Below, piece after piece: positions 415-48,381 of a DNA stretch of 64,000 nt. The position numbers were made by a program, and so were the translations under genes. This DNA comes from Kudoa neothunni. Taxonomy: Eukaryota > Animalia > Cnidaria. The stretch lies in contig OZ199840.1 of the NCBI GenBank assembly GCA_964304625.1, forward strand, positions 4,614,966 through 4,678,965, read 5' to 3'. The stretch's first letter is position 1, and every line of letters begins with the position of its first letter. The notes beneath the pieces are model-generated. The model saw nothing but the letters and a program-made list of their open reading frames with translations. It made no database searches and was not told where the DNA came from.

Positions 415-3400
415 GACTGTAGCTATGTTGGTGGCTCTGAGTGAGAAATATGGTTTATGATATTTTCTTAACTATCACTGAAGAATTTTGGTGATTGTTA
501 GATCAAGGTTGGAGGATAATAACGTCGTTTTCAATCTTGATCGAAGCGATTTTTTGATTATTTTATCATTTCTGCCGTATATTTTCTAACGATGGTTTAA
601 GCAAACTGCATGAGATAGTTCACACAACCAATGACTTACGTGGTTACAGAAAATTTTTAATATCAAAGTTATAATTAAGGGGGCGAACAAGCAATTTTTT
701 AATTGTTAAAAGATCCATTGTTATGTGAAATTAAACAGAACCAATAACTACCTTATATTGCACATAATTATAAGTTAGATTTATTAACTTTATTGACGAA
801 ATAGACCGCCATTTTCAACAAGGTCAATGAGTTCATGTGTGAACGATCTCTTTTGTGGATTTTTTCGCTATTAGAAAAAACCCTCTCTGAGCTCCAATTT
901 CCAGTAGGTCCCGAAAATAACTGTTACCTACTTTCTTAGATTTCGATATTTAGAACCTTCCAATAGTCTAGGGCGGGGATGGTAAGTTCTTGTTCGCTCG
1001 CAAGACTCCAAATTTGCACAAAATACTAATGAACGAACGTGAACGAAATTACAGCCTCAAATTATTTGAACGAACGAAATTGCCATCAATGGTAGAGAGA
1101 CACTATCTTAATTAAAACCTTCACTTAATAGAATGTCGAAGTTATCATTGAATTAATTTAATAATAAAATGTACGTGTAGAAATCCACAGTTTGATAAAA
1201 TTAAAAATCAGCGAATACTTGAGTAAATTGGAGATAATAACAAACTATATTTGATAATTAATTATAAAAAGCTTAAATAATATTTTGATTTGAGAGTTCT
1301 AATTTTTGTTCTTCATGTATCCGAAATAGAAACCTATCCCGATAACCACGATAACAACTGGAACAATCACGGAAATAATTCTAAAGATAAAGATTAAAAT
1401 ACTCAAAATTGATTATTAATACATCGTATTTTTGGATCTAAAAGAAATTAGACAAAATGATGACATATCAAAAGTTACGTTGATTTGTTTGAAGATTCAC
1501 CTATTAAATATTTATAATTAGCATCGAAATATTATGATGGTTACCTTGTTTAATTATTCCAACACCGTAGGTATTTGGATCTTCATTATAGAATAGAGTC
1601 AAATGGTAATCGTGTATATCTTCAACTTCTGTAATTGTGAATTCCTTGCAACGAGGTAATTGAGTGCAACCTTTACCAACAACCATGCATTTTTTCACGA
1701 TGGGATTTGAGGGTTCTCCAGAATTTTTTAACTGCCATTTGCATAACGCATTTTCGTCCAAACCTTGAGGTAAAGTAGTGCTAACAGTCAATGTTTTATC
1801 GACACGTGTGATCACCACTATTAATTGTTTATTGAGATCAGTGGGTTGTGAAGGCAATGGGTCTAAAATGTAATTTTAAATAGCATTAGTAAATTTTTTA
1901 ATTTTCGTTGTAGTATTAATTCAATTTTAAAATTGGTTATATAAAAATTTATGAAGAAATACTTTTGGGTATATTTATTGAAACTTCTGTGGACCTTCCA
2001 ACAGCAGTCACCGAAACTTGATAATCTTTGTCTGATTCGTATCCTTCACTAAAAATGATATTGCTGCATAAGGGTGGTGCTTGGCACGATGAGATTGTAT
2101 TTGTATTGGTGGCAGTTGCTGCATTTACGTTTCGTTGGTCTCCTGATGATCTAGCCACCCCCATTTTTGATGTTGATACGAGAGTAGAACTTCCAGCAGC
2201 TCTTGTTGGAGTTCGTGATGGACATTCGTAAATTAGTCCATAATCTTCTCCTTGTTTAACTTTAACTTTGTAATGACATACGGCTGCTGGGTAAGGCGAT
2301 GATAAGGAACCTGCGACTTTAAAACCTTTATCCAACATTTGTTTTTCAAGTGTAAGTGTTGACAAAGCTTAAAAATTATTTAATTATTATTTTATGAAAA
2401 AATATGTTACCAGTTCTGAATTGGTGAACTTTGAAACCATAATCTTTGTGTGCAACAACTTTGAGATCATAATCGGTTCCTGGAGATAACCCCACGATAG
2501 TTTGAGACTCCCCACAATATCCTCTGCATGGATAACTATCAACGCACATTGCACAAACATACGTATCTTTCCCTCGCGGGCTTAGATAGTAAGCACATGT
2601 GGTACTAGTTTTTGAAATCGATGTTTCAACATTAAGTGCCTTAATAGATAGACCTGTATCTCGTATTGTTGGTGTAGCAGTAGGAAATGTTTTTGATTCG
2701 TCGTTCGCTAAATTAAATATTCATGTAATTATTATGTAGATATTTTTATACATTGACTTGTTCTGAAGAATATATGTTCTTTAAAACTAGCTGGGATTTT
2801 ATTGTTGCTTCCAGGTGCATTTGTTGCTGCGGCAACTTCGAGAATATAAGGTTTACCAGGTGCAAGCTGGATTATTGTTAATGAAGTGGCGCAATCTGTG
2901 GCACATGGTGATGTACCAGAAGTATTGCATTGTGCTCTAGTGGCGGCGGTAGTAGTAGGCATTGGTTTGTCAGCCGCGTAATAATTTACAGTACATTCGG
3001 AAAATTTGGTCTCAACACCTTCTTGTTGAAATAAAGCTACATTTAACGTGACACCAACTGTTGAGTACGATGATAACAATTTCCCAGTGTCATTTTCAGC
3101 ATCAGTTTCCGTAACAACTAAGAGCGTATTATTTAAAAACAACTTAATCAATATTACCATATTTCTTTTGTATGTAGCCAGAATATTCGGCTCCATTTGC
3201 TTGGAGCGGAAAATGTCTGGACTGAACTAAAACTTCAACAACCACTTCTGATGTCTCAAAAATAAGCTCAACGTCGTTACATGGTGCATAACAATCTTTA
3301 TTTTCGCCGCCGCAATTTGATTTGTAATCATTAGTACTACCTTGAGGAATGCCGGTTGACGCTTTTTTAATACTGAACTTACAAATTTCAAATGGAAATT

Positions 3401-4814
3401 TGTTAGTAAATTTTAATAAATATTTAGTTTTTTCTTTATTGTATGTCACATAATATTGAGGTACATAAACGTCCGTCTTCATTAATGTGTATCTATTTTG
3501 AAGTTTATAAAAGAAACTTGGATAGTTCGTGCATTTCATTTCATAATGGGGGATCATTAAATCAAATTCTACTTTATTATCATTATTCGTATCATTTGCT
3601 TCGATACAACTTCCATCAGCTGTTCCATCGGCATATTTAACACCCTTGTAATATATTGGGCAATCGACGTTTTTGCATGTTATTGTGCTAAATTTTAATT
3701 TATTTTCGGTTGTGGTAGTTATTGTAACTTGCGGATTTACCAATAAAGCTAATAAAATTTTAGATAGATTGAAAAAACCCGTAAATTACGTATCTCAAGT
3801 CCGAAGATAGTTGGGTCTGTAACTTTTGTATTAACGACTTCAGTAGTATCTGCAACAAAAACTTCCACATATTTGGTTCTCGGAGAAAATTTATCGTATG
3901 CAAATCTTATATCATCTCCTGTGCATGTCCTAACACACTGTCCAACACCAGAACCAGTCTTATTTTCTGGACACGAATCGATTTCTCCATAAACATTCCC
4001 AGGCTCATTTAACTTTTGTATATGACAATGTTTTGAAGTATAATCAGTACCACTTAATACTAAATTAACTTTCATTTTATCATCATGTTTCACAATCTTA
4101 TAGGTAAGCATTTTTGTTGCAGTTGTTTGAGGTTGTGGTGCCACCGGCGTGCTAGCTTCGGCTAATAAAGCATATATGGCTAATATTTAATTAATAAAAT
4201 AAATATAGAGTATAAAATTTACAAACAATTTGAAGAAAAATTCCCATTGCATAGACCGAACATTTCATTGTAATGAAGATAATCTATTGACGAAAATTAT
4301 CGTTTTATTTATAAAATATATCGCGAATTCGTTTTAATGAATGTGTAGATGTTGATTAATAAATTATTTTTTCACATTAGTAAAATTTAATAAGGCTTAT
4401 TTGACCTACGTCCATATTTAACATGAAAATTAAGGATCATGTAAGAATCTATGGAAACATTTTTGGGGAATTTACTTTATACTTCAAATATTAACATTGA
4501 AATTTAATAAATCCACGCATTTTATTATTGTGTAAATTATCTTAATATAATCAATTATTTAATTTACAACTTCAAAAAAGTTCTATTCTTATTATAACGA
4601 TTTCTTTCTACTTTCAAAAAACATAAAATGATTTTATATATACCGTGGTCTGGTTTAAAAAAATACATTATTTCATTTGTCAACATATTTTCCATTAACA
4701 TAAAGTAATTTGCTCTTATTTACTTAGAATACAATAATGTATCAAATATGTGAGATTATTCGATAATTTAAAGGTAAAAAAATTTCATCTTAATGTTAGA
4801 CACAAATTTCAGTT
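415..4814 (-). repeat. Left arm of a large inverted segmental duplication (partner 13178..17101 plus 20120..20585) containing surface-protein gene copy A and its flanks
   Basis: The reverse complement aligns by eye. Examples: gactgtagctatgtt (415) vs aacatagctacagtc (20571); 841-880 vs the flanks of the MULE at 17093/20120; caactgaaatttgtgtc (4814) vs caactggaatttgtgtc (13178). Confidence 0.9.
1299..4268 (-). CDS. Surface-protein family copy A: 10-exon type I membrane protein (signal peptide, Cys-rich FN3-like modules, TM, KNKN tail)
   Basis: ATG at 4268 (MKCSVYAMGIFLQIV), with GT-AG introns at the same positions as copy C. ORFs 3749..4144, 3144..3743, 2732..3196, 1949..2365 and 1504..1857 are its exons. 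The final exon is IIISVIVPVVIVVIGIGFYFGYMKNKN*, stop at 1301-1299. No disruption seen. Confidence 0.88.
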
Positions 4815-13724: not shown

Positions 13725-16692
13725 ATGAAATGTTCAGTCTATTCAATGGGAATTTTTCTTCAAATTTTTTGTAAATTTTATACTCTATTTATTTTATTAA
13801 TTAAATACTAGCCATATATGCTTTATTAGTCGAAGCAAGCACACTGGTGGCACCACAACCTCAAACAACTACAACTAAAATTCTTACCTATAAGATTGTG
13901 AAACATACTGATCAAATGAAAGTTAATTTGGTATTAAGTGGTACTGCTTATACTTCAAAGTATTGTCATATAAAAAAGTTAAATGACGCTGGGAATGATT
14001 ATGGAGAAATCGATACGTGTCCAGAAAATAATACTGGCACAAATACTGGACAATGTGTTAGGGCTTGTACAGGAGATGATATAAGATTTGCTTACGATAA
14101 ATTTTCACCAAGAACAAAATATGTGGAAGTTTTTGTTGCAGATACTACTGAAGCCGTTAATACAAAAGTTACAGACCCAACTATTTTCGGACTTGAGATA
14201 CGTAATTTAAGGGTTTTTCAATATATCTAAAATTTTATTAGCTTTATTGGTAAATCCGCAAGTTACAACAACTACCACAACCGAAAATAAATTAAAATTT
14301 AGCACAATAACATGCAAAAACGTCGATTGCCCCATATATTACAAGGGTGTTGAATATGCTCCTGGAACTAAAGGAGGAAGTTGTATCGAAGCAAATGATA
14401 CGAATAATGATAATAAAGTAGAATTTGATTTAATGATACCCCATTACGAAATGAAATGCGCGAGCTACCCAAGTTTTTTTTATAAACTTCAAAATAAATA
14501 TACATTAATGAAGACGGACGTTTATGTACCTCAATATTATGTGACATATAATAAAGAAAAAACTAAATACTTTTTAAAATTTACTAATAAATTTCCATTT
14601 GAAATTTGTAAATTCAGCATAAAAAAAGCATCGACCGAAATTACTGAAAGTACAACAAATGATTACAAATCAAATTGTGGCGCCGCAAATAAAGATTGTT
14701 ATGCACCATGTAACAACGTTGAGCTTATTTTTGAGGCATCAGAAGGGGTCGTTGAAATTTTAATTCAATCAAGACATTTCCCGCTTCAAAAATTCGGAGC
14801 TGTATACTATGGATACAAACAAAAAAAATATGGTAATATATATTCATTTGTTTGAAATATTATATTTTTAGTCGTGACCGAGACTGATGCAGCTGATGAC
14901 TCTGGCAAATTGCTATCAAATTATTTAGCAACTGGTGTCACGTTAAATGTTCCTTTATTTAAACCGAGCGATATTAACACCAAATTTTCCGAATGTACCG
15001 TAAGTTACTACGCTGCTGATAAACCAATGCCTACAGCTACCATTGCCACTTCAACTGGAGCAAAATGCAGTAGTACTTCAGAACCAACATCATGTCTCGC
15101 AGACTGTGCCACTTCATTAACAATAATCCAGCTGACACCCGGTAAACCTTATATTCTTGAAATTGCTGCAGCAGGAACTGCACCAGGAGAAACCAATAAA
15201 ATCCCAGCTAATTTTAAAGAACATATATTCTTCAGAACGAGTAAAATTATGAAAGTTCCTAATGATGACGTATATATTTAATTTAGAGAATGACGCAGAA
15301 AAAACATTTCCAATTGTTTCACCGACAATACGAGATACAGGTCTATCTATTAAGGCACTTACTGTAGAAACACCGATTTCCAAAACTAGCACCACATGTG
15401 CTTATTATCTAAGTCCCCGAGGAAAGGATACATATGTTTGTGCAATGTGCGTTGATAGTTATCCATGCAGAGGATATTGTGGGGAGTCTCAAACTATTGT
15501 AGGGTTATCTCCAGGAACCGATTATGATCTCAAAGTTGTTGCGCATGAAGGTTATGATTTCAAAGTTCACCAAATCAGAACTGGTATTATATTTTTACCA
15601 AAAATAAATGAACAATTTTTAAGTTTTGTCAACACTTACACTTGAAAAACAAATGTTGGATAGAGGTTTTAAAGTCACAGGGTCCTTATCGTCGCCTTAC
15701 CCAGCAGCCGTATGTCATTACAAAGTTAAAGTTAAACAAGGAGAAGATTATGGACTAATTTACGAATGTCCAGCACGAACTCCAACAAGAGCTGCTGGAA
15801 GTTCTACTCTCGTATCAACATCAAAAATGGGGGTGGCTAGATCATCAGGAGACCAACGAAACGTAAATGCAGCAACTGCCACCAATACAAATACAATCTC
15901 ATCGTGCCAAGCACCACCTTTATGTAGCAATATCATTTTTAGTGAAGGATACGAATCAGATAGGGATTATCAAGTTTTAGTGACTGCAGTTGGAAGGTCC
16001 ATTGAAGTTTCAATAAATATACCCAAAAGTATTTCCTCATAAATTTTTATACAACCACTCTTAAAATTGAATTAATACTACAACGAAAATTAAAAAATTT
16101 ACCAATGCTATTTAAAATTATATTTTAGACCCATTGCTTTCACAACCCACGGATCTCAATAAACAATTAATAGTGGTGATCACACGTGTCGATAAAACCT
16201 TGACTGTTAGCACTACTTTACCTCAAGGTTTGGACGAAAATGCATTATGCAAATGGCAGTTAAAAAATTCTGGAGAACCCTCAAATCCCATCGTGAAAAA
16301 ATGCATGACTATTGGTAAAGGTTGCACTCAATTACCTCGTTGCAAGGAATTCACAATTACAGAAGTTGAAGATATACACGATTACCATTTGACTCTATTC
16401 TATAATGAAGATCCAAATACCTACGGTGTTGGAATAATTAAACAAGGTAACCATCATAATATTTCAATGTTAATTATAAACATTTAATAGGTGAATCTTC
16501 AAACAAATCAACGTAACTTTTGATATGTCATCATTATTTCTAATTTCTTTTAGATCCAAAAATACGATGTATTAATAATCAATTTTGATTATTTTAATAA
16601 TTATCTTTAGAATTATTTCCGTGATTGTTCCAGTTGTTATCGTGGTTATCGGAATAGGTTTCTATTTCGGATACATGAAGAACAAAAATTAG
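13725..16692 (+). CDS. Surface-protein family copy B (intact, 10 exons)
   Basis: ATG at 13725 (MKCSVYSMGIFLQIF; an in-frame upstream ATG is at 13707). Exons correspond to ORFs 13847, 14247, 14874, 15262, 15626 and 16134, plus two micro-exons and a TM exon ending MKNKN* at 16692. All splice sites are GT-AG and in phase. Confidence 0.88.
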
Positions 16693-17101
16693 AACTCTCA
16701 AATCAAAATATTATTTAAGCTTTTTATAATTATTTAGAAAATATAATTTTTTATAAACTTGGAATTATTTCCATCTTATTTAACTATTCGCTGATTTTTA
16801 ATTTTATCAAACTGTGGATTTCTACACGTACATTTTATTATTAAATTAATTTAATGATAACTTCGACATTCTATTAAATGAAGGTTTTAATTATGATAGT
16901 GTCTCTTCCCTCCAAGGATGGCAATTTCGTTCGCGTTTGTTCATTAGTACTTTATGCAAATTAGGAGTCTTGCGAGCGATCGCGAACTTACCACCCCCGC
17001 CTTAGACTACTGGAAGATTCTAAATATCGAAAGCTAAGATGCTAGTAACAGTTATTTTCGGGACCTACCGGCAACTCGAGCTCCGAGTGTTTTTTTTCTA
17101 G

Positions 17102-20100
17102 GGAAGTGGCTATATCTCGGGTAATCAATATCTCTAAAACTACTCGATATTGTTTGCCCATATTTCATATATCATCTAATGTTTATCTAACTTAATTTTT
17201 TGTAAATTTTTGAAAAATTAAAAAAAATTATTTTTTCTCTGTGTGACCATACACAAGTCAAACAGCAGTTGGGCACGATTTTTTATTTTTTTAATATAAT
17301 TTCATCAATTAACGTTTTATACACAAAATATAGAAATAAAAATAAATTTCTGAGTTATCTGTAACTTAAGAGCGCAATTTTTCTTTCTAATTAGCTTGAC
17401 ACAGAATGAGTTCAAATATGTTTGCAATTGGAAAACGATTTCTTTCTTTCGAAGAACTCGATAATGCTATAAAAAATTACGATGAGTCAAACTTTTGCAA
17501 TCTTTATAAATATCAAGCGAGGAATATTTCGAATATTCGGAATAGAATAACAAAATCAATTAACCAATCTCTGCGGTATTATGAAATTACATATCGTTGC
17601 ATTTTCAGTGGCAAGAATGAAACAAAATCCGATGGAATTAGAAAAAAACCGACATTAAAGGGAAACTGCCCCGTGGTTTTATCTCTTAGGACCTCTGTTG
17701 ATGGTGTAACACTTGAAATACGTTCTAGTATATTAGAACACAATCACGATTAAGTGCAGTGCTATATCGAAATCTCCCAAAACAACGAAAAATTGACCTA
17801 AATAAACCAAATCTAGTGAAATTAATTCATCTTAAGGTCAATAAAAAATTAATTCAAAATAAAATTTACAACGAAACGGATAAAAACATCCGTTTGAAAT
17901 CCATCCACCATATTAGAGCAAACAAAGACTCATTTTGTGATAACCTATGTGTAATAGAGAAAATGTTGAAAGAAGATTTCAAATGTTACGTTAAGATTTT
18001 ATATGATAAACATAAAGTCGTTAATGGAATTTTTTCGCTGACGACAAAATGAAATCATTTTAGGAATTTTATGCTGAGGTTATGTTCGTTGATGCAACTT
18101 ATAAACTCCTTAATTCAAGGTAACTTTTGAAAACGGATGAATAATTTTATAATTTTAGTGCCCCGTTATACATATCTGCTGGGGAGTATTCTTTTGGTTT
18201 GACTCACATTTCGAATGCCTGCATTCTCTACGAAGAGATTGAAGATTCCATCCAATGGTTTTGTAATACTTTGGCAGAATTGATACCAAACTTATCAAAA
18301 AATGTACATACCATTGTTACAGATAAGGATGAAAAGCTAAGAAAATGTCTCAAATTAAGTTCTCCACTATCATCATTCATTTTATGTAAATTTCATGTGA
18401 ATCAAATTTTTCAAAGACATATCACCGTTAACAAATTTGAAATATCTTCTACTAAAAGACAAGAGATTTTAAGTTGTTTACAAAAAATGATGTACCCGAC
18501 TGACTACAATAAATATTTACATTACGTTGACCAGATTCACGATTTTAAAAATCCCAAATTAAGTGAATACTTCAAAAGAAATTGGGAAGGAATATACAAT
18601 GAATGGGTTATTGGTATTAGCAACACGAAAAATGTTTACGACAACGAAACCAATAATCGCCTTGAGGTAATAAATTCCAAAATTAAGTGATGTCCAAAAA
18701 TTCAGCTCGTTGACTAATTTCATCTAAGGTTTTTTTTAAATTCTAAGTTCACTTAGAATTGAAAGGGAAGTTTCTTCAATTAATCAACTGTATTATGAAT
18801 CAAACGATATTCTCAACAACAAGCAGGTTCTACACTATAAAGAATTTCTGACGAAGTATGCATTTATCATGCATCAAAAAAAACATAAATTCTTAGGCAA
18901 TTCTGCATTATCCTCTAATTCAAATGAAATCACAACTCGATAAATGTGTCTTTGTTTATTTTATCGCTCATTTTCATTACCATGTCGCCATATTCTAAGT
19001 TACAGGTTATCAGAGAAACTCCCGTTATTCTGTGAAACATTATGCAATGATCGATGGAACATGGCATACGGAATGAAGTTTTTAAATGCGGAATCTACAG
19101 CTCAAAATAATACAGAAAATCTTCCTACTGTTGTTCTTGAAAAGAAACAAAAAATTAACATAAAGAAATTTGGAAAAAAGTTGAAGTACGCGTCAAATTT
19201 TACAACCAAACTAACCAACACAACTTCCGAATTTTGCGGAGAATTTTTCGAAAAATCAATAAATCTATTGGAAAAAATAATTAGAAGTCACGATGTCATG
19301 GTTATCGATCAGTTCCTTGATACATGTGATTTTTGTTTATAAATGAAATATTAAATTTTATATAATTAAAGATGAAACTGAATTTCAAGAAAATCTGTAA
19401 AATTTATAATTTTACTTTAACTAATAAAAATTAGGATTCATCGATAAATTTAATAGAAATCTCACCTACCAAAATGCCAAAACTTAATTCCAGTGATGAT
19501 TTTGGTCCTCTAGAAGAACAAATTGATTGTAACGATGAATCAAACGTCATCGTAGAAGAACCTCAATTAAAAGGTTAAACCTAAAAAAAATTATGCTAAT
19601 TTTTGTTTAGATATAGTGATTCCTTCTAAAGTTAAATCGATTGGTCGACCACAAGGAAGTCGTTTAACTGCTATCGGAATTATAAAGAAAAAGAAATAAA
19701 GTTATAACTTTAAAATTAAATATATACAAAAAATTTAATTTTGAGAATAATCCTCTACATGTATCATATGAAAGCTGTTTTATTGAGTGATCGCTTAAAC
19801 TAATATTTAAATCCATTATTAGTTTTATTTCATATAACGTGAAGAATATTTATTTCTTAAAAAAACAAACATTATTATTATTATTTCTATATTTTGTGTA
19901 TAATGACGCTAATTGATGAAATTATATTAAAAAAATAAAAAATCGTGCCCAGCTGCTGTTGGACTTGTGTATGGTCATACAAAGAAAAAATAATTTTTTT
20001 TAATTTTTCAAAAATTTACAAAAAATTAAGTTAGATCAACATTAGATGATATATGAAATATGGGAAAACAATATTGGGTAGTTTTAGAGATATTGATTAC

Positions 20101-22366: not shown

Positions 22367-25335
22367 ATGAAATGTTCGGTCTATGCAATGGGAATTTTTC
22401 TTCAAATTGTTTGTAAATTTTATACTCTATATTTATTTTATTAATTAAATATTAGCCATATATGCTTTATTAGCCGAAGCTAGCACGCCGGTGGCACCAC
22501 AACCTCAAACAACTGCAACAAAAATGCTTACCTATAAAATTGTGAAACTTGATAATAAAATGCAAGTCAATTTGGTATTAAGTGGTACTGCTTATACCTC
22601 TCCAAACTATTGCCATATAAAAAAGTCAAACGAGGTTGGTGCAGCATATGAAGAGATTAATACATGCCCTGGTGCACATGATCAGCACAGTACTAACAAA
22701 TGTGTTAGAGCATGTAATGGGGGAGAGAATAAATTAACTTACGATAAATTTTCTCCGAGAACCAAATATGTGGAAGTTTTTGTTGCTGCTAATGCTGAAT
22801 CTGCTTCTACAAAAACTACAGACCCAACTATCTTCGGACTTGAGATAGGTAATTTATATTTTTTTAAAATTAATCTAAAATTTCATTAGCTTTACTGGTA
22901 AACCCACAAGTTACAATAACTACTACAGCTCAACGTAAATTGAAATTTAGCACAGTAACATGCAAAAACGTCGATTGCCCAATATACTACAAGGGTGTTG
23001 AATATGCGCCTGGAACTAAAGGAGGAAGTTGTATAGCAGAAAATGGTCTGAATAGTGCTAACGAAGTAGAATTTGATTTAATGATCCCCCATTATGAAAT
23101 GAAATGCACGAACTATCCAAGTTTCTTTTATAAACTTCAGAATACATACACATTAATGAGCACAGACGTTTATATACCCCAATATTACGTTACATATAGT
23201 AACAAAGAAAAAACTAAATACTTATTAAAATTTACAAACAAATTTCCTTTTGAACTTTGTAAATTCAGCATAAAAAAAGCATCGACCGAAATTACTGAAA
23301 GTACAACAAATGATTACAAATCAAATTGTGGCGCCGCAAATAAAGATTGTTATGCACCATGTAACGACGTTGAGCTTATTTTTGAGACATCAGAAGGGGT
23401 TGTTGAAGTTTTAGTTCAGTCCAGACATTTTCCGCTCCAAGCAAATGGAGCCGAATATTCTGGCTACATACAAAAGAAATATGGTAATATTGATTAAGTT
23501 GTTTTTAAATAATGTGCTCTTAGTTGTTACGGAAACTAATGCTGAAAATGACACTGGGAAATTACTATCATCGTACTCAACAGTTGGTGTCACGTTAAAT
23601 GTAGCTTTATTTAAACCAAGTGATATTAACACCAAATTTTCCGAATGTACTGTAAGTTTCTACGCAGCTGACAAACCAATGTCTACCACCGGCACTACGG
23701 CACAATGCAATACTTCTGGTACACCCCAATGTCCCACAGACTGTGTCACTCCATTAACTATATTACAACTTGCACCCGGTAAACCTTACATTCTCGAAAT
23801 TGCTGGATCAGCAACTGTATCAGGAGGAGAGAATAAAATTCCAACTAATTTTAAAGAACATATATTTTTCAGAACAAGTCAATGTATAAAAATATCTACA
23901 TAATAATTACATGAAAATTTAATTTAGCGAATGAAAATACAAATACATTTTCTACTGTTACACCAACAATACGAGATACAAGTTTATCTATCAAGGCACT
24001 TAATGCTGAAACGTCGATTTCCCAAACTAGCACCACATGTGCTTATTATCTAAGTCCCCGAGGAAAGGATACATATGTTTGTGCAATGTGCGTTGATAGT
24101 TATCCATGCAGAGGATATTGTGGGGAGTCTCAAACTATCGTGGGGTTATCTCCAGGAACCGATTATGATCTCAAAGTTGTTGCACACAAAGATTATGGTT
24201 TCAAAGTTCACCAATTCAGAACTGGTAACATATTTTTTCATAAAATAATAATTAAATAATTTTTAAGCTTTGTCAACACTTACACTTGAAAAACAAATGT
24301 TGGATAAAGGTTTTAAAGTCGCAGGGTCCTTATCATCGCCTTACCCAGCAGCCGTATGTCATTACAAAGTTAAAGTTAAACAAGGAGAAGATTATGGACT
24401 AATTTACGAATGTCCATCACGAACTCCAACAAGAGCTGCTGGAAGTTCTACTCTCGTATCAACATCAAAAATGGGGGTGGCGAGATTATCAGGGGATCAA
24501 CGAAACGTAAATGCAGCAACTGCAACCAATACAGCTACAATCTCATCGTGCCAAGCACCACCCTTATGCAGCAATATCATTTTTAGTGAAGGATACGAAT
24601 CAGATAGGGATTATCAAGTTTTGGTGACTGCTGTTGGACGCTCTGTAGAAGTTTCAATAAATATACCCAAAAGTATTTCCTTAGAAATTTTTATATAACC
24701 ACTTTAAAATTGAATTAATACTACAACGAAAATTAAAAAATTTACTAATGCTATTTAAAATTACATTTTAGACCCATTGCCTTCACAACCCACGGATCTC
24801 AATAAACAATTAATAGTGGTGATCACACGTGTCGACAAAACATTGACTGTTAGCACTACTTTACCTCAAGGTTTGGACGAAAATGCATTATGCAAATGGC
24901 AGTTAAAAAATTCTGGAGAACCCTCAAATCCCATCGTGAAAAAATGCATGGTTGTTGGTAAAGGTTGCACTCAATTACCTCGTTGCAAGGAATTCACAAT
25001 TACACAAGTTGAAGATATACACGATTACCATTTGACTCTATTCTATAATGAAGATCCAAATACCTACGGTGTTGGAATAATTAAACAAGGTAACCATCAT
25101 AATATTTCGATGCTAATTATAAATATTTAATAGGTGAATCTTCAAACAAATCAACGTAACTTTTGATATGTCATCATTTTGTCTAATTTCTTTTAGATCC
25201 AAAAATACGATGTATTAATAATCAATTTTGAGTATTTTAATCTTTATCTTTAGAATTATTTCCGTGATTGTTCCAGTTGTTATCGTGGTTATCGGGATAG
25301 GTTTCTATTTCGGATACATGAAGAACAAAAATTAG
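22367..25335 (+). CDS. Surface-protein family copy C (intact), 841 aa. Exons 22367-22412, 22456-22848, 22890-23483, 23524-23877, 23928-24224, 24268-24672, 24772-25089, 25134-25155, 25197-25211, 25254-25335
   Basis: Hand-spliced: nine GT-AG introns of 40-99 nt join into one 2526-nt open frame. It begins with the hydrophobic signal peptide MKCSVYAMGIFLQIVSIYALLAEA and ends with the TM helix IIISVIVPVVIVVIGIGFYFGYM plus KNKN*. Confidence 0.9.
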
Positions 25336-32104: not shown

Positions 32105-35100
32105 TTATTGTTGGGTTACGTTAGTATCGCAGCAATTTTCCAACAATTGTTCCCAGCGTTCTTCAAAGAAGGAAGACATACTTTTACATGCAATATAGAT
32201 CTAAAAATTCAATAAGTGATCATTTTCCAACTAAATATATCTCAAATATGCATACCTCAGATTCGGATTGATTGAAACGTCTGCAGTTTTCAAAAATAAG
32301 ACGTACGTCGGCAACAAATTCATCGCGATCTTTGTATCTTTACAACAAAAAAGTCAGAACTAATGATCGAAAAATGAAAAATCGATTACTCAAGCGCTTT
32401 CAATTTCAGGTCTATTTGATGCAGATCAATTGGTTTTCTGATAACTTGAAGGTATAGAGGATATTTTTCAAGATCAACAGGTTTTGTGAATTCTTCCGCA
32501 TTTGGGTGGTCGTATAGTTCATGCAATAAAACGTGGCATGGAGTAAACATCTCACAAATGTCCATTTTGAATTTTTTCGAAATACGTTTTCTTCCAGATT
32601 CAACCACGGTTTTTGATGTGCGGCAAGCCTCGCAACAACTGGGACAGATGTAGAGGTCATTAGCGCTACTTTGCAATGCACTCATCATATCAACACATTG
32701 TCGATGGTGATAATAGAGACAAAGGGAACATCGTATAGGTTCCATCACGTTTTCATCTTCAATCTCGTTTTCATTCACGCTCTCATTCATATTATCAATT
32801 TTAGTATCTACAGCCAAGTCATCTTCATTGTCGGATTGCAGTTCACATTCAATCATTTGTTTAGGTGGATTTTGGAATGTGGATGTGTTACATTCACGAC
32901 ATATGGTGAACGAATTTTCTTGAGCATTCAGGCAGATCAAGCTCTTACAATGATTACAACTCCAGGTCTTTTGATCCACAAGCGAGAGATCTTCTTGGAA
33001 GCCTTGACAATACAAATGATGGGATTTGTGGCAGTACATGCAGCTTATAACGCTGTCAAAATTAACGTTAAGATGACACTTGTAGCAGAATTTGTTGTGG
33101 ATTGGTGATACTAATGGTGGCGGTTGAGGAATGTTGCTGCCATTTTTGTTGTTATTGTTATTATTATTGACATTGGACGAAGCGGGTTCAAGAGATACGT
33201 TCAACTGCAACGAAGTGAGAACCAACTCTAAATCATAGCAAGCATCACCGCAACTTTCAATGAAATCAATCAAGCTTTTAATGTATCGATTTTTTGCCTC
33301 TCTGGAGTTGGTTTTGGCTTTTTTAACCAAAGCAATGAGACCTCTGGCGTCAAGCATGTTAATAAGTTGTGCCAGTTTGGATTTGAATACAGGAACAAAA
33401 TCTTTGCTCTTTAAGTCTGTCGAAAGATCGATGGTTTCGAGTTCATGATCATCAAAAACGTTTTTCTTTCGAATAAAATCCACAAACTGATTGTACTGAA
33501 GATGGACAATTCGATTCACTGTAACACCATAATTTTTCTGTACCCAAGGGGAAGATTGGACCACATAGAACGTTTCATCAGAATTAAATGAACTGGAGAG
33601 ATCTCGATAGAATTTACTCGGTGAAAGTGCATCATCAGACATATTTTTGATGTTACGATTCAAATTTTTCGACAACATTCTTTCTCTCATTCCCAGATTA
33701 TTTAGACTTTTTAATAACGCGCGAAAATCGTTCATATTTTCAATCAGCATAAGGCGAGTGAATCCGTTAGTTTGCTGTGTTGTCAACGAGACTGAATCTT
33801 TATTATCATCGTTATCCAATTCAAGCTTGATATCTTCGTCATTACGATGTTCAGTTGCAACCGATGGATCAGCAAAAGGATGAGCAAGTGGAATATGTTC
33901 TTGTTTGACATCAGTGGCGAGAGTATCCTTATTGATGGTATTGTTTTGTTCGGTAATAGAATCACAAGTAATATGAGTGATTGGATTGTCATTTTGGTGT
34001 GGTTCGGGTGAAGCAGGAGATTTACTGTTAAGGAAATTGTCCAATTCAAGTTCACCAGGATTATGTTCTACGAACACACAACTAGAATGATAGAGGATGG
34101 AATAGAAGCGCGAAAAACGATCTTGTCCAATAAACGGTCCTTTAAATCGCCTGAAGAAAGCATACCACCAATCTTTAAGCACCTTCTGAATGTTATCAAG
34201 ATAATCGCTGAGTTGTTTGCACTCCTCCATTGTTTTAGGTAGAGGCGTGGTATTAGCGTCAAATTTGACGGCCTCCAATAGCAACGGATCACTCACACTA
34301 ACCACATTGTGGTTGTTTTGGATGGAGTTTTTATTTCTGTTGTTTCTCCTAGAGGAATTGTGATCATCGTCATCGTCTTCCTCATCATCAATTTCGTTAT
34401 CCTCATCATAAGCAGCCGAGTTTTCATCTTGATCTTCCACGTCAACATTGGCGTTGTTTGGTGGTCCTTCCGCGGTGGCTTCAGCATTTTCATCATTATT
34501 GCCACCATTTGGAGGGTTGTCAGCTGTTTCTCCTAGAGGTGATTCTGACTGTTGTTCCGCTGTTGCAATATGTGAAGAATTTGTAGTCGTTTCTAATTGG
34601 GGTGATTCCGACTGTTGTTCCACTGTTACAAAGTTTGAAGAATTGATCGTTGTTGCCAATTGAGGAGATTCTGATTGTTGATCCACTGTTGCAATATGTG
34701 AAGAATTGGCAGTTATTTCCAACTGAGGTGATCCTGACTGTGGTTCACCAATCGCAACAGGTTCTGTAACGATTAGATGGCCTTCCGTCTGATTATTTTG
34801 ATTAGCAGTAACATTCTCCCCCTCATTAGCTTGAGTCGAGGCGTTTTGTTTTCTTGCCAACAAGGTCATATGACGTTTGAGTTTTCTGATGAAACTTTCC
34901 ACATTCCATTTAGCCCCTTTGATTGCTTGGAAATCATTTGAAATCACATCCAAATTGTTCAAGATGCAAGGAGTTTTGGTAAGCGTATTGTTAAGGAACA
35001 ACAACACAGTAGATTTCAATAGAGGGCTCAATTTGAGAGGGGATGGGTTAGATTTGAGTGCATGAACAAGTGCTTTTAGATCTCTGTTGTAGCTGAGCGA

Positions 35101-38100
35101 GGACGCGAACTTCAAATGAGCAATGCTCTCAAGATAATCTTCAACGAACAGACGTATGATGGTTAGCATGTTGATGCTGTTAAACCGTTGGCTCACATCG
35201 AATTCGATTTTCATATCGTAACAAGCTGAGGGTAGTGGGAGCTTTTGATTCAGATAGGTCTCAAGTAGACATTCACACAAACACAAAAAGGGGCTGTTAA
35301 CCAAGTCCAACACGTCACACTCACCAACATCATCACACTTGTCAAAATTATCACTATCATTGTTAGTTGTGGTAAGTGTAATGGCGAAAATATCCTGTAT
35401 CACACTGCCAAAGGATGGCAGTACACTTAGCCGATTTTCCAATGGGAACAACTGATAAAATTCTTGCACAAATTCGAACACGGACGCTAAATTGGACATT
35501 GTAGCACACGCCTCCGCTTCAGACATCGACTCTCTAGCGGCGCAAATCAAGTTGTCAATCTGTAGATCACTGAACATAGGTATGTGGTTGGGTTGATCGA
35601 TTGTTTCATCGTCGAAAGCTTGTTTTGGCATTTTTACATATTTATTGCCAGGTCCATTCACAACACGCTCTTTGGAATTGGACGTTTTACCAACACGTTT
35701 GGATTTTGATTTAAGAAGTGAAATGGATCCGTTTCCCATAGAAATTGATTTTTTGTTTTTTCCCGAGCCACCAGCAGATAAATTAGACTGGTCATCATTA
35801 GGTGTTTCGTTAAACTTCATTCGTTTAGCTTTCGAGGGGGTTTTGGAGGTGGCGCCTTTAGGGCGTCCTCTTTTTTTGGTGATAACCAACTGTGGTGGAT
35901 GTCCAGAAGTGACCATGGTAGCAATTGCTGTTTGTTGAGAGTTGTCTAAAGCCTCCGTATTGTTCGATTGATTCAAAAACACTTCATCTCCGTTATTTGA
36001 CAAATAAGAGTTCGTGAGACCATCATCGAACTCGCCAACTGAATAACTTTCTGGTCCACCACTAATAGATTGATGCCCGAGATCGTGAGAGGTTGATGGT
36101 CCTGGTTTTTCTATTAAAGAATCAGATGTTTTGGAGTTTTTCTTTAATCGTGGCACTTTGCCTATTGTACGAGTGTCCATATTGAAATGGATAGTGTTAT
36201 CAAAGTTGAAATTTTCAGGAATCAATTGAAAATTGAAACCCTCAGGTTGATTTTTGAGAAATCGTGATACCTCCCGCTTCGATCTCAATTCATAATCACC
36301 AATTGCTTCTGGTACCGCGTAGACAACAAACTTTTTCAGCACCTTAGTTTCGTATCCATATTTGGATCGGGAGATTTTGCGCTTGAATCCATAATCCATA
36401 GGTTTGAATTGGTCTTCGATAGGTAAAGACTCTGGCAACAATGACATCGACTCATTCAAATGAGCACTTGTGTTTGGTTCTTCGTTAGCTGTTGTTCCAA
36501 TTAAAGCGTTACTTGGCAACTTCATTTGATGGAAACTCGATGCAACCTTGTGTGACTGTCCAATTATGGGAAAATTATTACTGGAAGGTCCCCCCACCAA
36601 AGATTGCATCGGATTGAACACTCCGTTCTTGATATCGGAGGTGGCTGGCTGGTGATAAGAATGAAGAGTAGGAATAGGATAGGGAAGAGATTGGTCTATT
36701 GTGACTAAAGAATCGCCAGTTGCTATATTGCCACTAGTGTTGTTTGGTAATGCTAAAAGGTGAGTCATTAAAATATTTTTTAATGAACCTATAAACAAGA
36801 ATGCACAAACTCCGGCACTCATTGAACCTTCATTAAATTCAGATTAATGGTATTATTTTAAATGAAACGAAAAAAATCATTCGATTATTTAACTTTGATT
36901 GGTTTATTTAAATATTGAATATATCAAGAACACCTAATGAAGCTATTAAACAAATTTATTGGAGTTTTTTATTGTATAAAAACCATCAAAAAAAACCCTC
37001 TAAATAGGCAAAAAGATTTATTACTATTGGTCACCTCACCATGTACCCCATGTACCCCATGTACCCCATATGCCCCATGTGACCCATGTGATATAGAGAA
37101 AGCGTTTTTATAATAGAAGTTCATGTCACAATTTTAATTACTTCTTCCTGAGTGTGTGTGTGTGTATGTGTGTGTATAGAAGAGGAGAATAAAATCATAC
37201 AGGTATTGGGCGGATTTATGATTTAAAAATTCGTTGAACAATGCTGATTCGAAGTTAAGGTTCAATTAAAATAAGATTAATGATTAAAGTGAGTTTTATA
37301 AACGATGCGAAATTATATTTATATTTTGTGTAAAAATCAATGTTTCCATAGGAAGAATAAAAACTAAAAAAACTTTGTGTCAACGTTTATTTTACACACG
37401 TTAAAGCTGATAATGAGTACATATTAATGGGCAATTTAAACCGCACTTCACATATTACATATGGGCACACAACTACTTTGCCCACCAAAAGTGTATCTCA
37501 CATTTAATTCAGCTTATTTTTATTTCCCAGCTAAAACGACTGAAATTCGAAACAAAGTTGATGACAAGAATAGAAAATTTAATAACGCCTGGTCAGAAAA
37601 ATATGGTTTTATTCAACGGGGGACGAATATTATTTGTTTTCTATGTCATTCGCTATTCAATTTAAAGCATTCAGTACACAAGTTATTTATCGATTATTTT
37701 GAATATTGCGCTTCGAAATTCGAAAATTCATTCAAAGTGCGAGCTATAACTTTAGTTTTAAACCTCCTGACCCCTGGAAACTTTCAAAGATTAAAATTTG
37801 GCTCAACGCTCCAAAAGTTTGTGCACCAATAGCTCAAAACTTACCACTATTCGAAGAGTGAATAGGAGTGCCACTCATACTTCCGACGCCACCACCAACG
37901 CAAATAGTGGGATTGTTATTGTCCAAACAATCCGGCCCACCACAAACATTCATGTTCTTCGGAAGATACATCAACGGTGGTTGATACATTTTGAGTGGTT
38001 CTTTGTGTGAGGACAATTCCAGTGATGGCAATTGAGTATTGTTACCAATTTCATTGTGAGGATTAATAGGGTTGATAGGAGTGGTCTTAGTGTTTTCGTT

Positions 38101-46219: not shown

Positions 46220-48381
46220 CTATTTTTTATTCCTGTATTTGAAATAGGAACCTATTCCAACACCCACGATAACAACTGGTAGAATCACGGAAATAATTCT
46301 AAATATAAAGATTAAAATAATCAAAATTGATTATTAATACATCGTATTTTTGGATCTAAAAGAAATTAGAAACAATGTTGACATACCAAAAGTTACGTTG
46401 ATTTGTTTGAAGATTCGCCTATTAAATATTCATAATTAAAATCAACATCAAAATAATATGATGGTTACCTTGTTTTATTATTCCAACACCGTAGGTATTT
46501 GGATCTTCACTATAGAATAGAGTCAAATGGTAATCGTGTATATCTTCAACTTCTGTAATTGTGAATTCCTTGCAACCAAGTAATTGAGTGCAACCTTTAC
46601 CAACAACCATGCATTTTTTCACGATGGGATTTGAGGGTTCTTGCAATATCCTCTGCAAGGATAACTATCAACGCACATTGCACAAACATATGTATCTTTT
46701 CCTCTCGGGCTTAGATAGTAACCACATGTAATGTCGGTTTTGGAAATCGGCGTCTAAACAGCAAGTGCCTTAATAGATAGACTTGTATCTCGTATTGTTG
46801 GTGAAACAGTAGGAAATGTTTTTGTCTCGCTATTACCTAAATTAAATATATACGTAATCAATAGGGATTTTTATAATTTTACTCGTTCTGAAGAATATAT
46901 GTTCTTTAAAATCAGTTGGGATTTTATTGGTTTCTTCTTGTACATCCGTTGCTGCGGCAACTTCGAGAATATAAGGTTTTCCAGCATCAAGCTGTGATAT
47001 TGTTAACGCATCAGTACATGATCTGTTACATAGAGTACCCTCAGCATCGCATGTTGCTTCCATGCTCACAGTAAGCACTGGTTTATCAGCAGCGTAGTAA
47101 CTTACAACACACTGCGTAAACTTTGTATTGACAGTACCAGGATTAAATAAACGTACATTTAATGTGACACCAGTTTCTAAATAATTTGAGAGCAATTTTC
47201 TAGTGTTATCGACAGCATTAGTTTCCGTAATAACTAAAAGGGTATTATTTACAAAATTTAATAAATATTACCATATTTCTTTTGTATATAACCAGGATTT
47301 TCGATTCCTTTTTCTTGGAGGGGAAAATGTCTGGATTGAATTAAAATTTCAACTATCGTTTTTGATGCATCAAAGGTAAGTTCGACGTTGTCGCCTGGTG
47401 CATAACAATCTTTATTTTTCTCACCACAATTTGATTTGTAAACATTAGTATTATCTGTAGCACGTTCGGCTAAAGCTTCTTTAATATTAAATTTACAAAT
47501 TTCAAACGGAAATTTGTTAGTAAATTTAAGTAAATATTTAGTTTTATTTGGGTTGTTATATGTCACACAATACTGGGGTATATAAACACCCATGTTCATT
47601 AAAGTGTATCTATTTTGAAGTTTATACAAGAAACTTGGATAGTTCTCGCATTTAATTTCATAATAGGGTATCATTAAATCTAATTCTACTTCACTGTCGT
47701 CATCCACATCATTTGCTACGATACAACTATCACCAGCTGTTCCACCAGCATATTCAACCCCCTTGTAATATATTGGGCACGCAACTTTTTTGCATGTTAT
47801 TGTGCTAAAATTTCAATTTACGTTGAGCTGTAGTAGTTATTGTAACTTGTGGATTCACCAATAAAGCTAATCGAATCTTAAATAATTTCAAAAAAACATA
47901 AATTACGTGTCTCAAGTCCGAAGATAGTTGGGTCTGTAGTTTTTGTAGCAGCAGCACTATCTGCAACAAAAATGTTGACATATTTTGTTCTTGGTGAAAA
48001 TTTATCGTAGGTTAATCTTATATTGTTTCCTGTGCATGCTCTTACACATTTGTTATTACCATTGTGAGTATCATTTTCTGGGCACGTATCAGTTTCGTCA
48101 TAATCCCCACTAGCCTCATTTAACTTTTTTATATGACAAAAGTTTCCAGAAACATAAGCAGTACCGCTTAATACTAAATTAACACGCATTCTGTTTTCAT
48201 GTTCCATAATCTGATAGGTAAGAACATTAGATGTAGATGCTGAAGCTCTTGGTGCATCTTGTCTCCCTGTCTCAGTTAAGAAGGCGTTTCCACCTGATAC
48301 TTTATATAAAAATTCATAGTAAATCAAAAATTTACAAAACATCGCAATTAGAAGCCCTATTAAGTAGATAAAACCCTTCAT
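46220..48381 (-). pseudogene. Surface-protein family copy D: divergent pseudogene
   Basis: Same exon order, from signal peptide MKGFIYLIGLLIAMF to the TM exon ending YRNKK*. Three lesions: +1 T giving TAG at 47805-47807, TAG at 46754-46756, and an out-of-frame deletion at about 46642 fusing exon 5 (YPCRGYC) to mid exon 7 (EPSNPIV). Confidence 0.88.

What the first reader, a model, noticed from the sequence alone, without database searches (positions are those of the whole stretch)
13847..16487. Diversity gradient: hypervariable Cys-bounded loops distally, near-invariant exons and introns proximally
Module 1 loop: CPENKTGSGVGQC / CPENNTGTNTGQC / CPGAHDQHSTNKC / CPENDTHNGNNKC. Exon 4 loop: TTTAATRAQCNTSGTSPCATDC / TATIATSTGAKCSSTSEPTSCLADC / TTGTTAQCNTSGTPQCPTDC / TVSMEATCDAEGTLCNRSC, with in-frame indels. 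Exons 6-10 differ by only a few residues among A-C, and their introns are better conserved than these coding loops. Loops more divergent than neighbouring introns, on a fixed Cys scaffold far from the membrane, suggest diversifying selection on exposed surfaces (inference).
Basis: partly seen in the sequence, partly recalled or inferred. Interest (0 to 1): 0.8.

Follow-up and report, generated by a model that had tools for sequence, protein, structure and literature searches.

The report
Half-homogenised Kudoa surface-protein gene copies
Neighbouring copies of a surface-protein gene in a tuna-muscle parasite are alike at the membrane end and different at the tip mainly because the copies keep overwriting each other's membrane-end half, and selection for variable tip loops is not shown.

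Summary
Copy B (13725-16692, +) is an intact 10-exon gene for a type I membrane protein built from Cys-stapled FN3-like modules. All quoted loops, the in-frame indels and the invariant Cys scaffold are there. Identity among the six cluster copies rises from about 0.80 (exons 2 and 4) to 0.97 (exons 6-7).

Silent sites and introns show the same gradient: dS is 0.39-0.45 distally and 0.07-0.09 proximally, and introns 2-4 are 0.83-0.85 identical against 0.96-0.97 for introns 6-9. Omega barely changes (0.24-0.50 against 0.25-0.27). Against an out-of-cluster copy, and between clusters, the proximal exons and introns are as diverged as the distal ones.

The gradient is therefore concerted evolution. 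Gene conversion has homogenised the 3' half, and shorter patches make the 5' half a mosaic (13 of 15 cluster pairs, p<=0.004). The same polarity recurs in two other clusters.

The Cys-bounded loops lie in predicted non-strand regions and evolve at about the silent rate (pN/pS 0.65-1.2). Site-model tests are marginal and weaken when local trees are allowed.

The genome matches Kudoa neothunni. No RNA evidence exists. Earlier follow-ups of this scan reached similar readings on other DNA of this genome.

The parts
13725..16692 (+). Copy B: intact 10-exon gene (844 codons). E1 13725-13770, E2 13812-14201, E3 14242-14832, E4 14872-15240, E5 15287-15583, E6 15624-16028, E7 16129-16446, E8 16491-16512, E9 16554-16568, E10 16611-16692.
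   Evidence: (with E8 end corrected): all GT..AG, an open frame of 2535 nt with no internal stop. Splice sites are conserved in all seven close copies. No RNA reads are available to confirm splicing.
14018..14056 (+). Module-1 Cys-bounded loop (residues 85-97, C-x11-C). It is the most diverged patch of the gene.
   Evidence: Nucleotide identity is 0.53 among A-C and 0.64 among six copies, and the best pair reaches only 0.82-0.87. pN/pS is 1.0-1.1 here and 0.65 pooled over three clusters. It lies in a low-confidence non-strand stretch between strands 50-56 and 81-84 of the exon-2 model.
15027..15107 (+). Exon-4 variable stretch: a Thr-rich leader plus two Cys-bounded loops (residues 395-421; the Cys loops are 15066-15107). 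It carries in-frame indels.
   Evidence: Identity is 0.73-0.76 gap-free and 0.67 with gaps counted. pN/pS is 0.52 for the leader and 1.3 for the Cys loops, and 1.13-1.37 for the Cys loops in three clusters, pooled CI 0.83-1.93. The stretch is a coil of pLDDT 52-67 between strands 42-47 and 82-84 of an FN3-like model.
13725..15390 (+). Distal mosaic half (E1 to mid-E5): old divergence interrupted by short identical tracts shared with different copies.
   Evidence: dS is 0.39-0.45. Tracts include B-U1 13835-13973, A-C 13730-13886 and B-C 14612-14711, each p<=0.0005 by permutation. The window-by-window partner changes, and the exon trees disagree.
15390..16700 (+). Homogenised proximal block (mid-E5 to the stop and, for some copies, beyond). 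Exons and introns alike are 95-100% identical among the six cluster copies.
   Evidence: dS is 0.07-0.09. The same stretch is only 0.71-0.80 identical in introns to the out-of-cluster copy F, with dS 0.28-0.37 for E6-E7.
1299..4268 (-). Copy A: intact paralog, head-to-head with B.
   Evidence: 841 codons, no stop, all splice sites kept.
22367..25335 (+). Copy C: intact paralog, in tandem with B.
   Evidence: 841 codons, no stop, all splice sites kept.
46220..48381 (-). Copy D: broken paralog, with a frameshift early in exon 3 and a deletion from mid-exon 5 to mid-exon 7.
Evidence: It was left broken and kept out of all codon models.

Best explanation
The stretch is one intact member (B) of a local cluster of seven full-length and two partial paralogs on chromosome 3 of Kudoa neothunni. 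Five full-length copies read intact, one carries frameshifts, and one is the broken copy D. They encode a type I membrane glycoprotein made of Cys-stapled FN3-like modules, one or two per phase-1 exon. The distal-variable, proximal-invariant gradient is chiefly a footprint of partial concerted evolution. Long gene-conversion or unequal-exchange tracts have recently overwritten the 3' 1.3 kb (mid-exon 5 to the 3' end, exons and introns together) in all cluster copies. The 5' 1.6 kb keeps older divergence and receives only short patches, which makes each copy a different mosaic. Inside that older half, the Cys-bounded loops are the least constrained positions of the beta-sandwich. They change at about the silent rate and tolerate in-frame indels, so they stand out as hypervariable. 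Shown: the gradient at silent sites and introns, the mosaic tracts, the loss of the gradient between clusters, and the loop location of variability. Inferred: that conversion (rather than repeated partial duplication) is the exchange mechanism, why it is polar, and that the protein sits on the parasite surface.
For: Silent divergence and intron divergence follow the same gradient as amino-acid divergence, while omega is flat. Four-fold sites are 0.716 identical in E2-E4 against 0.929 in E6-E10. Identical tracts are far longer than chance in 13 of 15 cluster pairs (p<=0.004) and in none of 6 pairs with the copy 740 kb away. Partners change along the gene and the trees of exons 2, 3 and 4 disagree. 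Against copy F the proximal introns are 0.71-0.80 identical, like the distal ones at 0.75-0.82. The within/between-cluster distance ratio falls from 0.66 (E2) to 0.15 (E7) in three independent clusters. Between clusters E7 (0.338; third positions 0.508) is as diverged as E2 and E4 (0.371 and 0.376; third positions about 0.50). Amino-acid identity of B to distant members is 46/66/53/69/58/52% for E2-E7, so it is not monotonic. Loop pN/pS is about 1 and the site-model tests are not robust. Organism: 40.26 Mb, three chromosomes of 17.15/12.04/11.05 Mb, an 18.2-kb mitochondrial contig, one (GGTTTA)n end and about 30% GC. These match the published K. neothunni assembly (PMC12239612).
Against: Omega is about twice as high in exons 2 and 4 (0.40-0.50) as in exons 3, 6 and 7 (0.24-0.27). 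Weaker constraint, or some positive selection, therefore adds roughly a factor of two to the amino-acid gradient. The exon-4 Cys loops give pN/pS above 1 in all three clusters (1.37, 1.16, 1.13), and M8 against M7 on a single exon tree gives p=0.005. The same polarity in three clusters needs a systematic cause, which could be selection against homogenising the tip. There is no transcript evidence, so the gene model and expression are unconfirmed. The codon models were my own implementation on six sequences.
Confidence: 0.75

Rival explanations
1. Diversifying selection on exposed distal loops: replacement changes in the Cys-bounded loops are favoured, for example by host immunity or variable ligands, and this creates the gradient.
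For: Variability sits in predicted non-strand positions. Exon-4 Cys loops have pN/pS of 1.13-1.37 in three clusters. M8 against M7 gives p=0.039 for exon 2 and p=0.005 for exon 4 on single exon trees. With local trees exon 2 still gives p=0.025-0.03. No two copies share a loop, although flanking tracts are shared.
Against: dS and introns carry the same gradient. Pooled loop pN/pS is 0.65 (CI 0.43-0.91) for module 1 and 1.19 (CI 0.83-1.93) for exon 4. M2a against M1a gives p=0.052, 1.0 and 0.059. With local trees exon 4 drops to p=0.41 and 0.08, and the exon-2 signal rests on about one codon in a hundred with an implausible omega near 40. Recombination, which is demonstrated here, is known to inflate such tests.
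Confidence: 0.15
2. Stronger purifying selection on the membrane-proximal modules and on functional elements in their introns keeps them invariant.
For: E7 and E10 have low omega (0.17-0.25, and 0 within the cluster).
Against: Proximal introns are 20-29% diverged from copy F. Between clusters E6 and E7 are as diverged as E4, at third positions too. Omega of E6 against F (0.40) equals that of E4 (0.42).
Confidence: 0.05
3. A regionally raised mutation rate (targeted hypermutation or slippage) in the 5' half.
For: Silent sites and introns are more diverged distally. The Thr-rich leader of exon 4 varies by indels.
Against: Between clusters, third-position distances are equal along the gene (0.43-0.51). 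The distal half holds perfectly identical tracts of 100-160 nt shared between copies.
Confidence: 0.03
4. Assembly artefact: the 3' halves were collapsed or cross-polished among paralogs in a low-coverage assembly.
For: The source paper describes low coverage for this genome. One copy (U1) has four single-base indels in homopolymer runs.
Against: The proximal halves are not identical but carry copy-specific differences with their own mosaic. Contigs from the public run reproduce B exactly in pieces. The same polarity occurs in two other clusters at lower identity (0.92-0.95).
Confidence: 0.02

Closest known systems
Fibronectin type III / class II cytokine-receptor-like domains
   Same: The exon-4 model superposes on FN3 domains of fibronectin, tenascin and LAR (Z 6.0-6.9, 79-87 residues, rmsd 2.8-4.0). 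The exon-2 model superposes on IFNAR1, IL-9R and IFN-gamma receptor FN3 domains (Z 6.1-7.4). There is one module per symmetric phase-1 exon.
   Different: Pfam fn3 is hit only at E 0.04-0.09, below its threshold. Each module carries 3-6 invariant Cys residues and a long Cys-stapled insertion between the C and E strands. Exon 3 is double-sized and has no family hit.
Concerted evolution of tandem gene families by partial gene conversion (as described for rDNA, globins, and KIR and MHC genes; from general knowledge)
   Same: Within-cluster identity greatly exceeds between-cluster identity at silent sites and introns, with mosaic tracts and incongruent trees.
   Different: Homogenisation here is polar, covers only the 3' half, and recurs in three clusters of one family. 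In MHC genes the diverse exon shows omega above 1 and is flanked by homogenised introns. Here the introns flanking the diverse exons are themselves 15-20% diverged, and omega above 1 is not shown.
Variant surface protein families of parasites (Giardia VSP, Plasmodium var/rifin, trypanosome VSG; VSP-, RIFIN- and STEVOR-like families reported for the myxozoan Sphaerospora molnari, bioRxiv 10.64898/2026.02.11.705288)
   Same: A large clustered family of Cys-rich single-pass membrane proteins with pseudogene members and segmental exchange between copies.
   Different: The domain type differs (FN3-like). There is no evidence of exclusive expression or switching, positive selection is not shown, and no telomeric expression site is apparent. 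The papers read do not mention this family.

Membership tests
FN3 domain (Pfam PF00041) | Sequence match above the curated threshold | tested here: not met
   13.5-14.4 bits against a cut-off of 25, for exons 4 and 5 only. Exons 2, 6 and 7 have no Pfam hit, and exon 3 has only two unrelated sub-threshold hits.
FN3 domain (Pfam PF00041) | Seven-strand beta-sandwich that superposes on solved FN3 domains | tested here: met
   the top matches are almost all FN3 or cytokine-receptor domains, at Z 6-7.4. Model confidence is moderate (pLDDT 68-76), and Z below 8 is not decisive on its own.
Concerted evolution by gene conversion | Silent sites and introns more alike within a cluster than between clusters | tested here: met
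   the third-position within/between ratio is 0.17-0.21 for E6-E7, and introns 6-9 are 0.96-0.97 identical within the cluster against 0.71-0.80 to copy F.
Concerted evolution by gene conversion | Shared tracts longer than chance, with changing partners | tested here: met
   permutation of 899 polymorphic sites gives p<=0.004 for 13 of 15 cluster pairs. One search gives the partner map.
Concerted evolution by gene conversion | Phylogenetic incongruence along the gene | tested here: met
   different topologies for exons 2, 3 and 4 and for thirds of exons.
Variant surface antigen system | Large family of surface-exposed proteins | tested here: inconclusive
   There are 41 scored matches of 162 candidates in the genome. 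A signal peptide and a TM can be read from the sequence. Surface location is not testable here.
Variant surface antigen system | Positive selection (omega above 1) at exposed sites | tested here: inconclusive
   loop pN/pS is about 1, and the likelihood tests are marginal and sensitive to recombination.
Variant surface antigen system | Exclusive or switching expression of one member | not testable with these tools
   No RNA reads mapped in three metatranscriptome runs. The source paper also reports very few parasite transcript reads.
Variant surface antigen system | Silent or pseudogene donors feeding expressed copies | tested here: inconclusive
   Broken copies exist (D; U1). U1 shares a 140-nt identical tract with B, but the direction of transfer cannot be read.

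The most novel reading that the evidence does not exclude
The polar architecture is itself selected. Long conversions keep a common stalk and anchor, while short patchy conversions plus fast-changing Cys loops (the exon-4 loops under weak positive selection) keep reshuffling the tips. This would give a cnidarian parasite a combinatorially variable surface coat or adhesin repertoire.
Probability: 0.2. Interest if true: 0.7.

Novelty: new member of a known kind. Interest (0 to 1): 0.42.

Why it matters
Myxozoans are economically important fish parasites, and their surface biology is almost unknown. A family of at least dozens of FN3-like membrane proteins is not named in any database searched (15 unnamed fragments among 1.8 billion representatives), and the myxozoan genome papers I read do not mention it. 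That makes it a natural candidate for the host interface. This report gives the cautionary result: a variable tip on a constant stalk is not evidence of diversifying selection here, because silent sites and introns show the same pattern. The positive result is the recurrent 3'-polar homogenisation in three clusters. This regularity can be tested across Kudoa species and could show how such families are maintained.

Tried and rejected
- RNA evidence: three metatranscriptome runs carrying the same species label gave no read on the stretch, so this is no test of expression.
- Exact look-up of the neighbouring Argonaute to name the organism: not on record.
- Nematode SL1 RNA search: nothing, and the control also rang nowhere, so it is uninformative.
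- tRNA scan of the 18.2-kb mitochondrial contig: no credible tRNA set.
- Maximum-likelihood omega on loop-only partitions of 11-25 codons: unstable. Tree lengths were near 7, and one run converged below the constrained model. These values were discarded in favour of counting methods with a bootstrap.
- Single-tree M2a on concatenated exons 2-4 (p=0.001) and exons 5-7 (p=0.005): rejected as evidence, because the exons have different trees.
It was redone with M0 branch lengths scaled per segment.
- GC3 as a sign of biased conversion: no gradient (0.21-0.32).
- Foldseek on the exon-2 model: nothing at or below E 0.001. The exhaustive aligner was used instead.
- The word-based protein search with exon 3 found one fragment only.
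Full report
WHAT IS THERE

The window is AT-rich (about 30% GC). It lies at C3:4614966-4678965 of a 40.26-Mb assembly. The assembly has three chromosome-size contigs (17.15, 12.04 and 11.05 Mb) and an 18.2-kb contig. That small contig has 44% GC, open frames that need UGA=Trp, and no credible tRNA set. One chromosome end carries (GGTTTA)n.

These figures match the published Kudoa neothunni assembly recovered from yellowfin-tuna data. That assembly is 40.2 Mb with N50 12.0 Mb, three chromosomes, one (TAAACC)n telomere, a circular mitochondrial genome, 30.4% GC and a 49-nt median intron (PMC12239612). I checked it against the paper and against my own measurements.

THE GENE MODEL

The finding covers copy B of a gene that occurs four times in the window. 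At least nine closely related copies lie within 90 kb, or stand 740 kb away.

B is a 10-exon gene, 13725-16692 on the + strand. All introns are GT..AG. Eight introns are 39-46 nt and one is 100 nt. Exons 2-7 are symmetric phase 1 (with the E8 end corrected).

The product has 844 residues: a signal peptide, six exon-modules, two micro-exons, a 23-residue transmembrane helix and a five-residue tail. Splice sites and frames are conserved in A, B, C and two upstream copies (U2, U3). Copy U1 has four single-base indels. Copy D has a frameshift in exon 3 and a deletion from exon 5 to exon 7.

Pfam gives only sub-threshold fn3 hits. AlphaFold models of exon 2 (pLDDT 76) and exon 4 (pLDDT 68), built on alignments of 24 and 27 paralogous exons, are beta-sandwiches. 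Their best structural matches are FN3 and cytokine-receptor domains (Z 6-7.4).

HOW SPLICED AND BROKEN SEQUENCES WERE HANDLED

No search or fold tool was given the joined, spliced protein. All such calls were made exon by exon, by reference. The spliced coding sequence was assembled only inside scripts, for codon counting.

The broken copies (U1, D) were left broken and kept out of the codon models. Copy F entered those models without its exon 1, masked with N, because that exon is one base longer than in the other copies.

Exon-4 length differences are all multiples of three in the intact copies. All 29 ectodomain Cys columns are invariant.

Among A-C, exons 6-10 differ at 6-11 of 282 positions, and exons 2-4 at 83-110 of 455.

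Mean nucleotide identity among the six cluster copies is as follows.

| Exon | E2 | E3 | E4 | E5 | E6 | E7 |
|---|---|---|---|---|---|---|
| Identity | 0.80 | 0.86 | 0.81 | 0.93 | 0.97 | 0.975 |

The two loop regions are the local minima.

| Region | A-C | Six copies |
|---|---|---|
| Module-1 loop | 0.53 | 0.64 |
| Exon-4 Cys loops | 0.75 | 0.73 |
| Introns I2-I4 | 0.80-0.84 | 0.83-0.85 |
| Introns I6-I9 | 0.95-0.97 | 0.96-0.97 |

WHY THE GRADIENT IS NOT A SELECTION GRADIENT

1. The neutral markers show it too. Among the five intact cluster copies, the Nei-Gojobori estimates are as follows.

| Exon | E2 | E3 | E4 | E5 | E6 | E7 |
|---|---|---|---|---|---|---|
| dS | 0.39 | 0.45 | 0.44 | 0.14 | 0.09 | 0.07 |
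| omega | 0.50 | 0.24 | 0.40 | 0.38 | 0.27 | 0.25 |

   Four-fold sites are 0.716 identical in exons 2-4 and 0.929 in exons 6-10. Introns follow the same gradient.

2. The near-invariance of the proximal half is local. Against copy F, 740 kb away, introns 6-9 are only 0.71-0.80 identical, like introns 1-4 (0.75-0.82). Exon 6 has omega 0.40, the same as exon 4.

3. I compared three clusters: this one, ten copies at C3 0.86-0.95 Mb, and five copies at C3 1.64-1.90 Mb. Between-cluster distances are flat along the gene: 0.371, 0.277, 0.376, 0.288, 0.311 and 0.338 for E2-E7, with third positions at 0.43-0.51. Within-cluster distances fall steadily, so the within/between ratio drops from 0.66 at exon 2 to 0.15 at exon 7, in every cluster.

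4. The copies are mosaics. Permuting the 899 polymorphic columns shows identical runs longer than chance in 13 of 15 cluster pairs (p<=0.004), and in none of the six pairs with F. Partners change along the gene. A and C are 99-100% identical from the 5' flank into exon 2, and then 48% at the module-1 loop. B matches U1 at 13835-13973 and matches C at 14612-14711. Exon trees disagree.

This is partial, 3'-polar concerted evolution. A block from about 15390 to the 3' end has been homogenised recently, exons and introns together. The 5' half keeps old divergence with short conversion patches.

THE LOOPS THEMSELVES

Variability is higher at predicted non-strand positions (p=0.006 for exon 2 and 1e-5 for exon 4). 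The exposed-loop part of the reading is therefore reasonable, within the limits of moderate-confidence models and without solvent-accessibility data.

The loops nevertheless change at about the silent rate.

| Loop set | pN/pS in this cluster | pN/pS pooled over three clusters, bootstrap CI over columns |
|---|---|---|
| Module-1 loops | 1.0-1.1 | 0.65 (0.43-0.91) |
| Exon-4 Cys loops | 1.3-1.4 | 1.19 (0.83-1.93) |

I wrote M0, M1a, M2a, M7 and M8 codon-likelihood code and applied it to six sequences, with these results.

| Test | Exon 2 | Exon 3 | Exon 4 |
|---|---|---|---|
| M2a vs M1a, one tree per exon | p=0.052 | p=1.0 | p=0.059 |
| M8 vs M7, one tree per exon | p=0.039 | p=0.70 | p=0.005 |
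| M2a vs M1a, three local trees per exon | p=0.03 | not run | p=0.41 |
| M8 vs M7, three local trees per exon | p=0.025 | not run | p=0.08 |

With local trees, the exon-2 signal rests on about 1% of codons with an implausible omega near 40. On the single exon-2 tree, residues 92 and 130 were the sites flagged for that class. Recombination is known to inflate these tests.

Positive selection is therefore not shown, though it is not excluded for a few sites. The exon-4 Cys loops are the best candidates, because pN/pS exceeds 1 in all three clusters.

WHAT REMAINS OPEN

The recurrent polarity needs a cause. Three possibilities remain:
- Conversion may start from the conserved 3' end.
- Fast-diverging loop patches may block long tracts, a feedback between divergence and conversion.
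- Homogenised tips may be selected against.

The data do not separate these. Three breakpoints fall in exon 5: the start of the homogenised block near 15390, the start of a 3'-only partial copy just upstream of the window (equivalent to 15363), and the start of D's deletion (equivalent to about 15481). This hints at a preferred exchange zone.

RELATIVES AND NOVELTY

A profile of exon 3 found 15 proteins among 1.8 billion representatives. The ten I looked up are all unnamed singletons, and all 15 are short fragments. Two come from one other sequencing run. The word search found one fragment. The myxozoan genome papers read do not mention such a family.

Earlier follow-ups of this scan, on other windows of the same genome, described the same family and reached a similar verdict. 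My results agree with them, from independent measurements on this cluster.

The family appears undescribed. The phenomenon, partial concerted evolution in a clustered surface-protein family, is of a known kind.

Noticed in passing
window 18199-18690 (+); 52046-52816 (-): There is a MULE transposase fragment between copies B and C, and a hAT-type (DUF659) ORF further on. The S. molnari preprint reports MULE expansion as a shared myxozoan trait.
   Followed up: no
window 61325-63994 (+); 32386-36822 (-): There is an intron-less 889-residue Argonaute/Piwi-type ORF, and a 1478-residue ORF with WSD and bromodomain hits that looks BAZ-like. Both are long single-exon stretches in a genome with 40-nt introns.
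   Followed up: no
L003 (C3:4607078-4610143), copy U1, upstream of the window: Its four single-base indels, in exons 2, 3 (two) and 6, mostly sit in or beside short homopolymer runs. This is either a young pseudogene or consensus errors of a low-coverage long-read assembly.
   Followed up: partly
L008 (C3:4613332-4614765, 201 bases before the window); window 46643/46642; window about 15390: Three independent rearrangement or exchange boundaries fall inside exon 5. They are the start of a 3'-only partial copy, the start of D's deletion, and the start of the homogenised block.
   Followed up: partly
L041 and L042 (Logan contigs of run SRR31175926); L040 (ENA ERZ795007): These hold unnamed fragments homologous to exon 3 from other public samples. 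In L041 the fragment lies next to split SNF5/INI1 and ribosomal S14 genes, so it probably comes from another myxozoan that carries the family.
   Followed up: partly
G000:C4 (18,219 bases; L035 and L039): The mitochondrial contig has 44% GC, well above the nuclear 30%. Its frames open only with UGA read as a sense codon, and it has no credible tRNA set.
   Followed up: partly
window 13707: Only copy B has an extra in-frame ATG, six codons upstream of the start shared by all copies.
   Followed up: no
L007 (C3:3870556-3873609), copy F: Exon 1 is one base longer than in the other copies (47 against 46 nt), and intron 6 carries an insertion of about 30 nt. All other exons are in frame.
   Followed up: no
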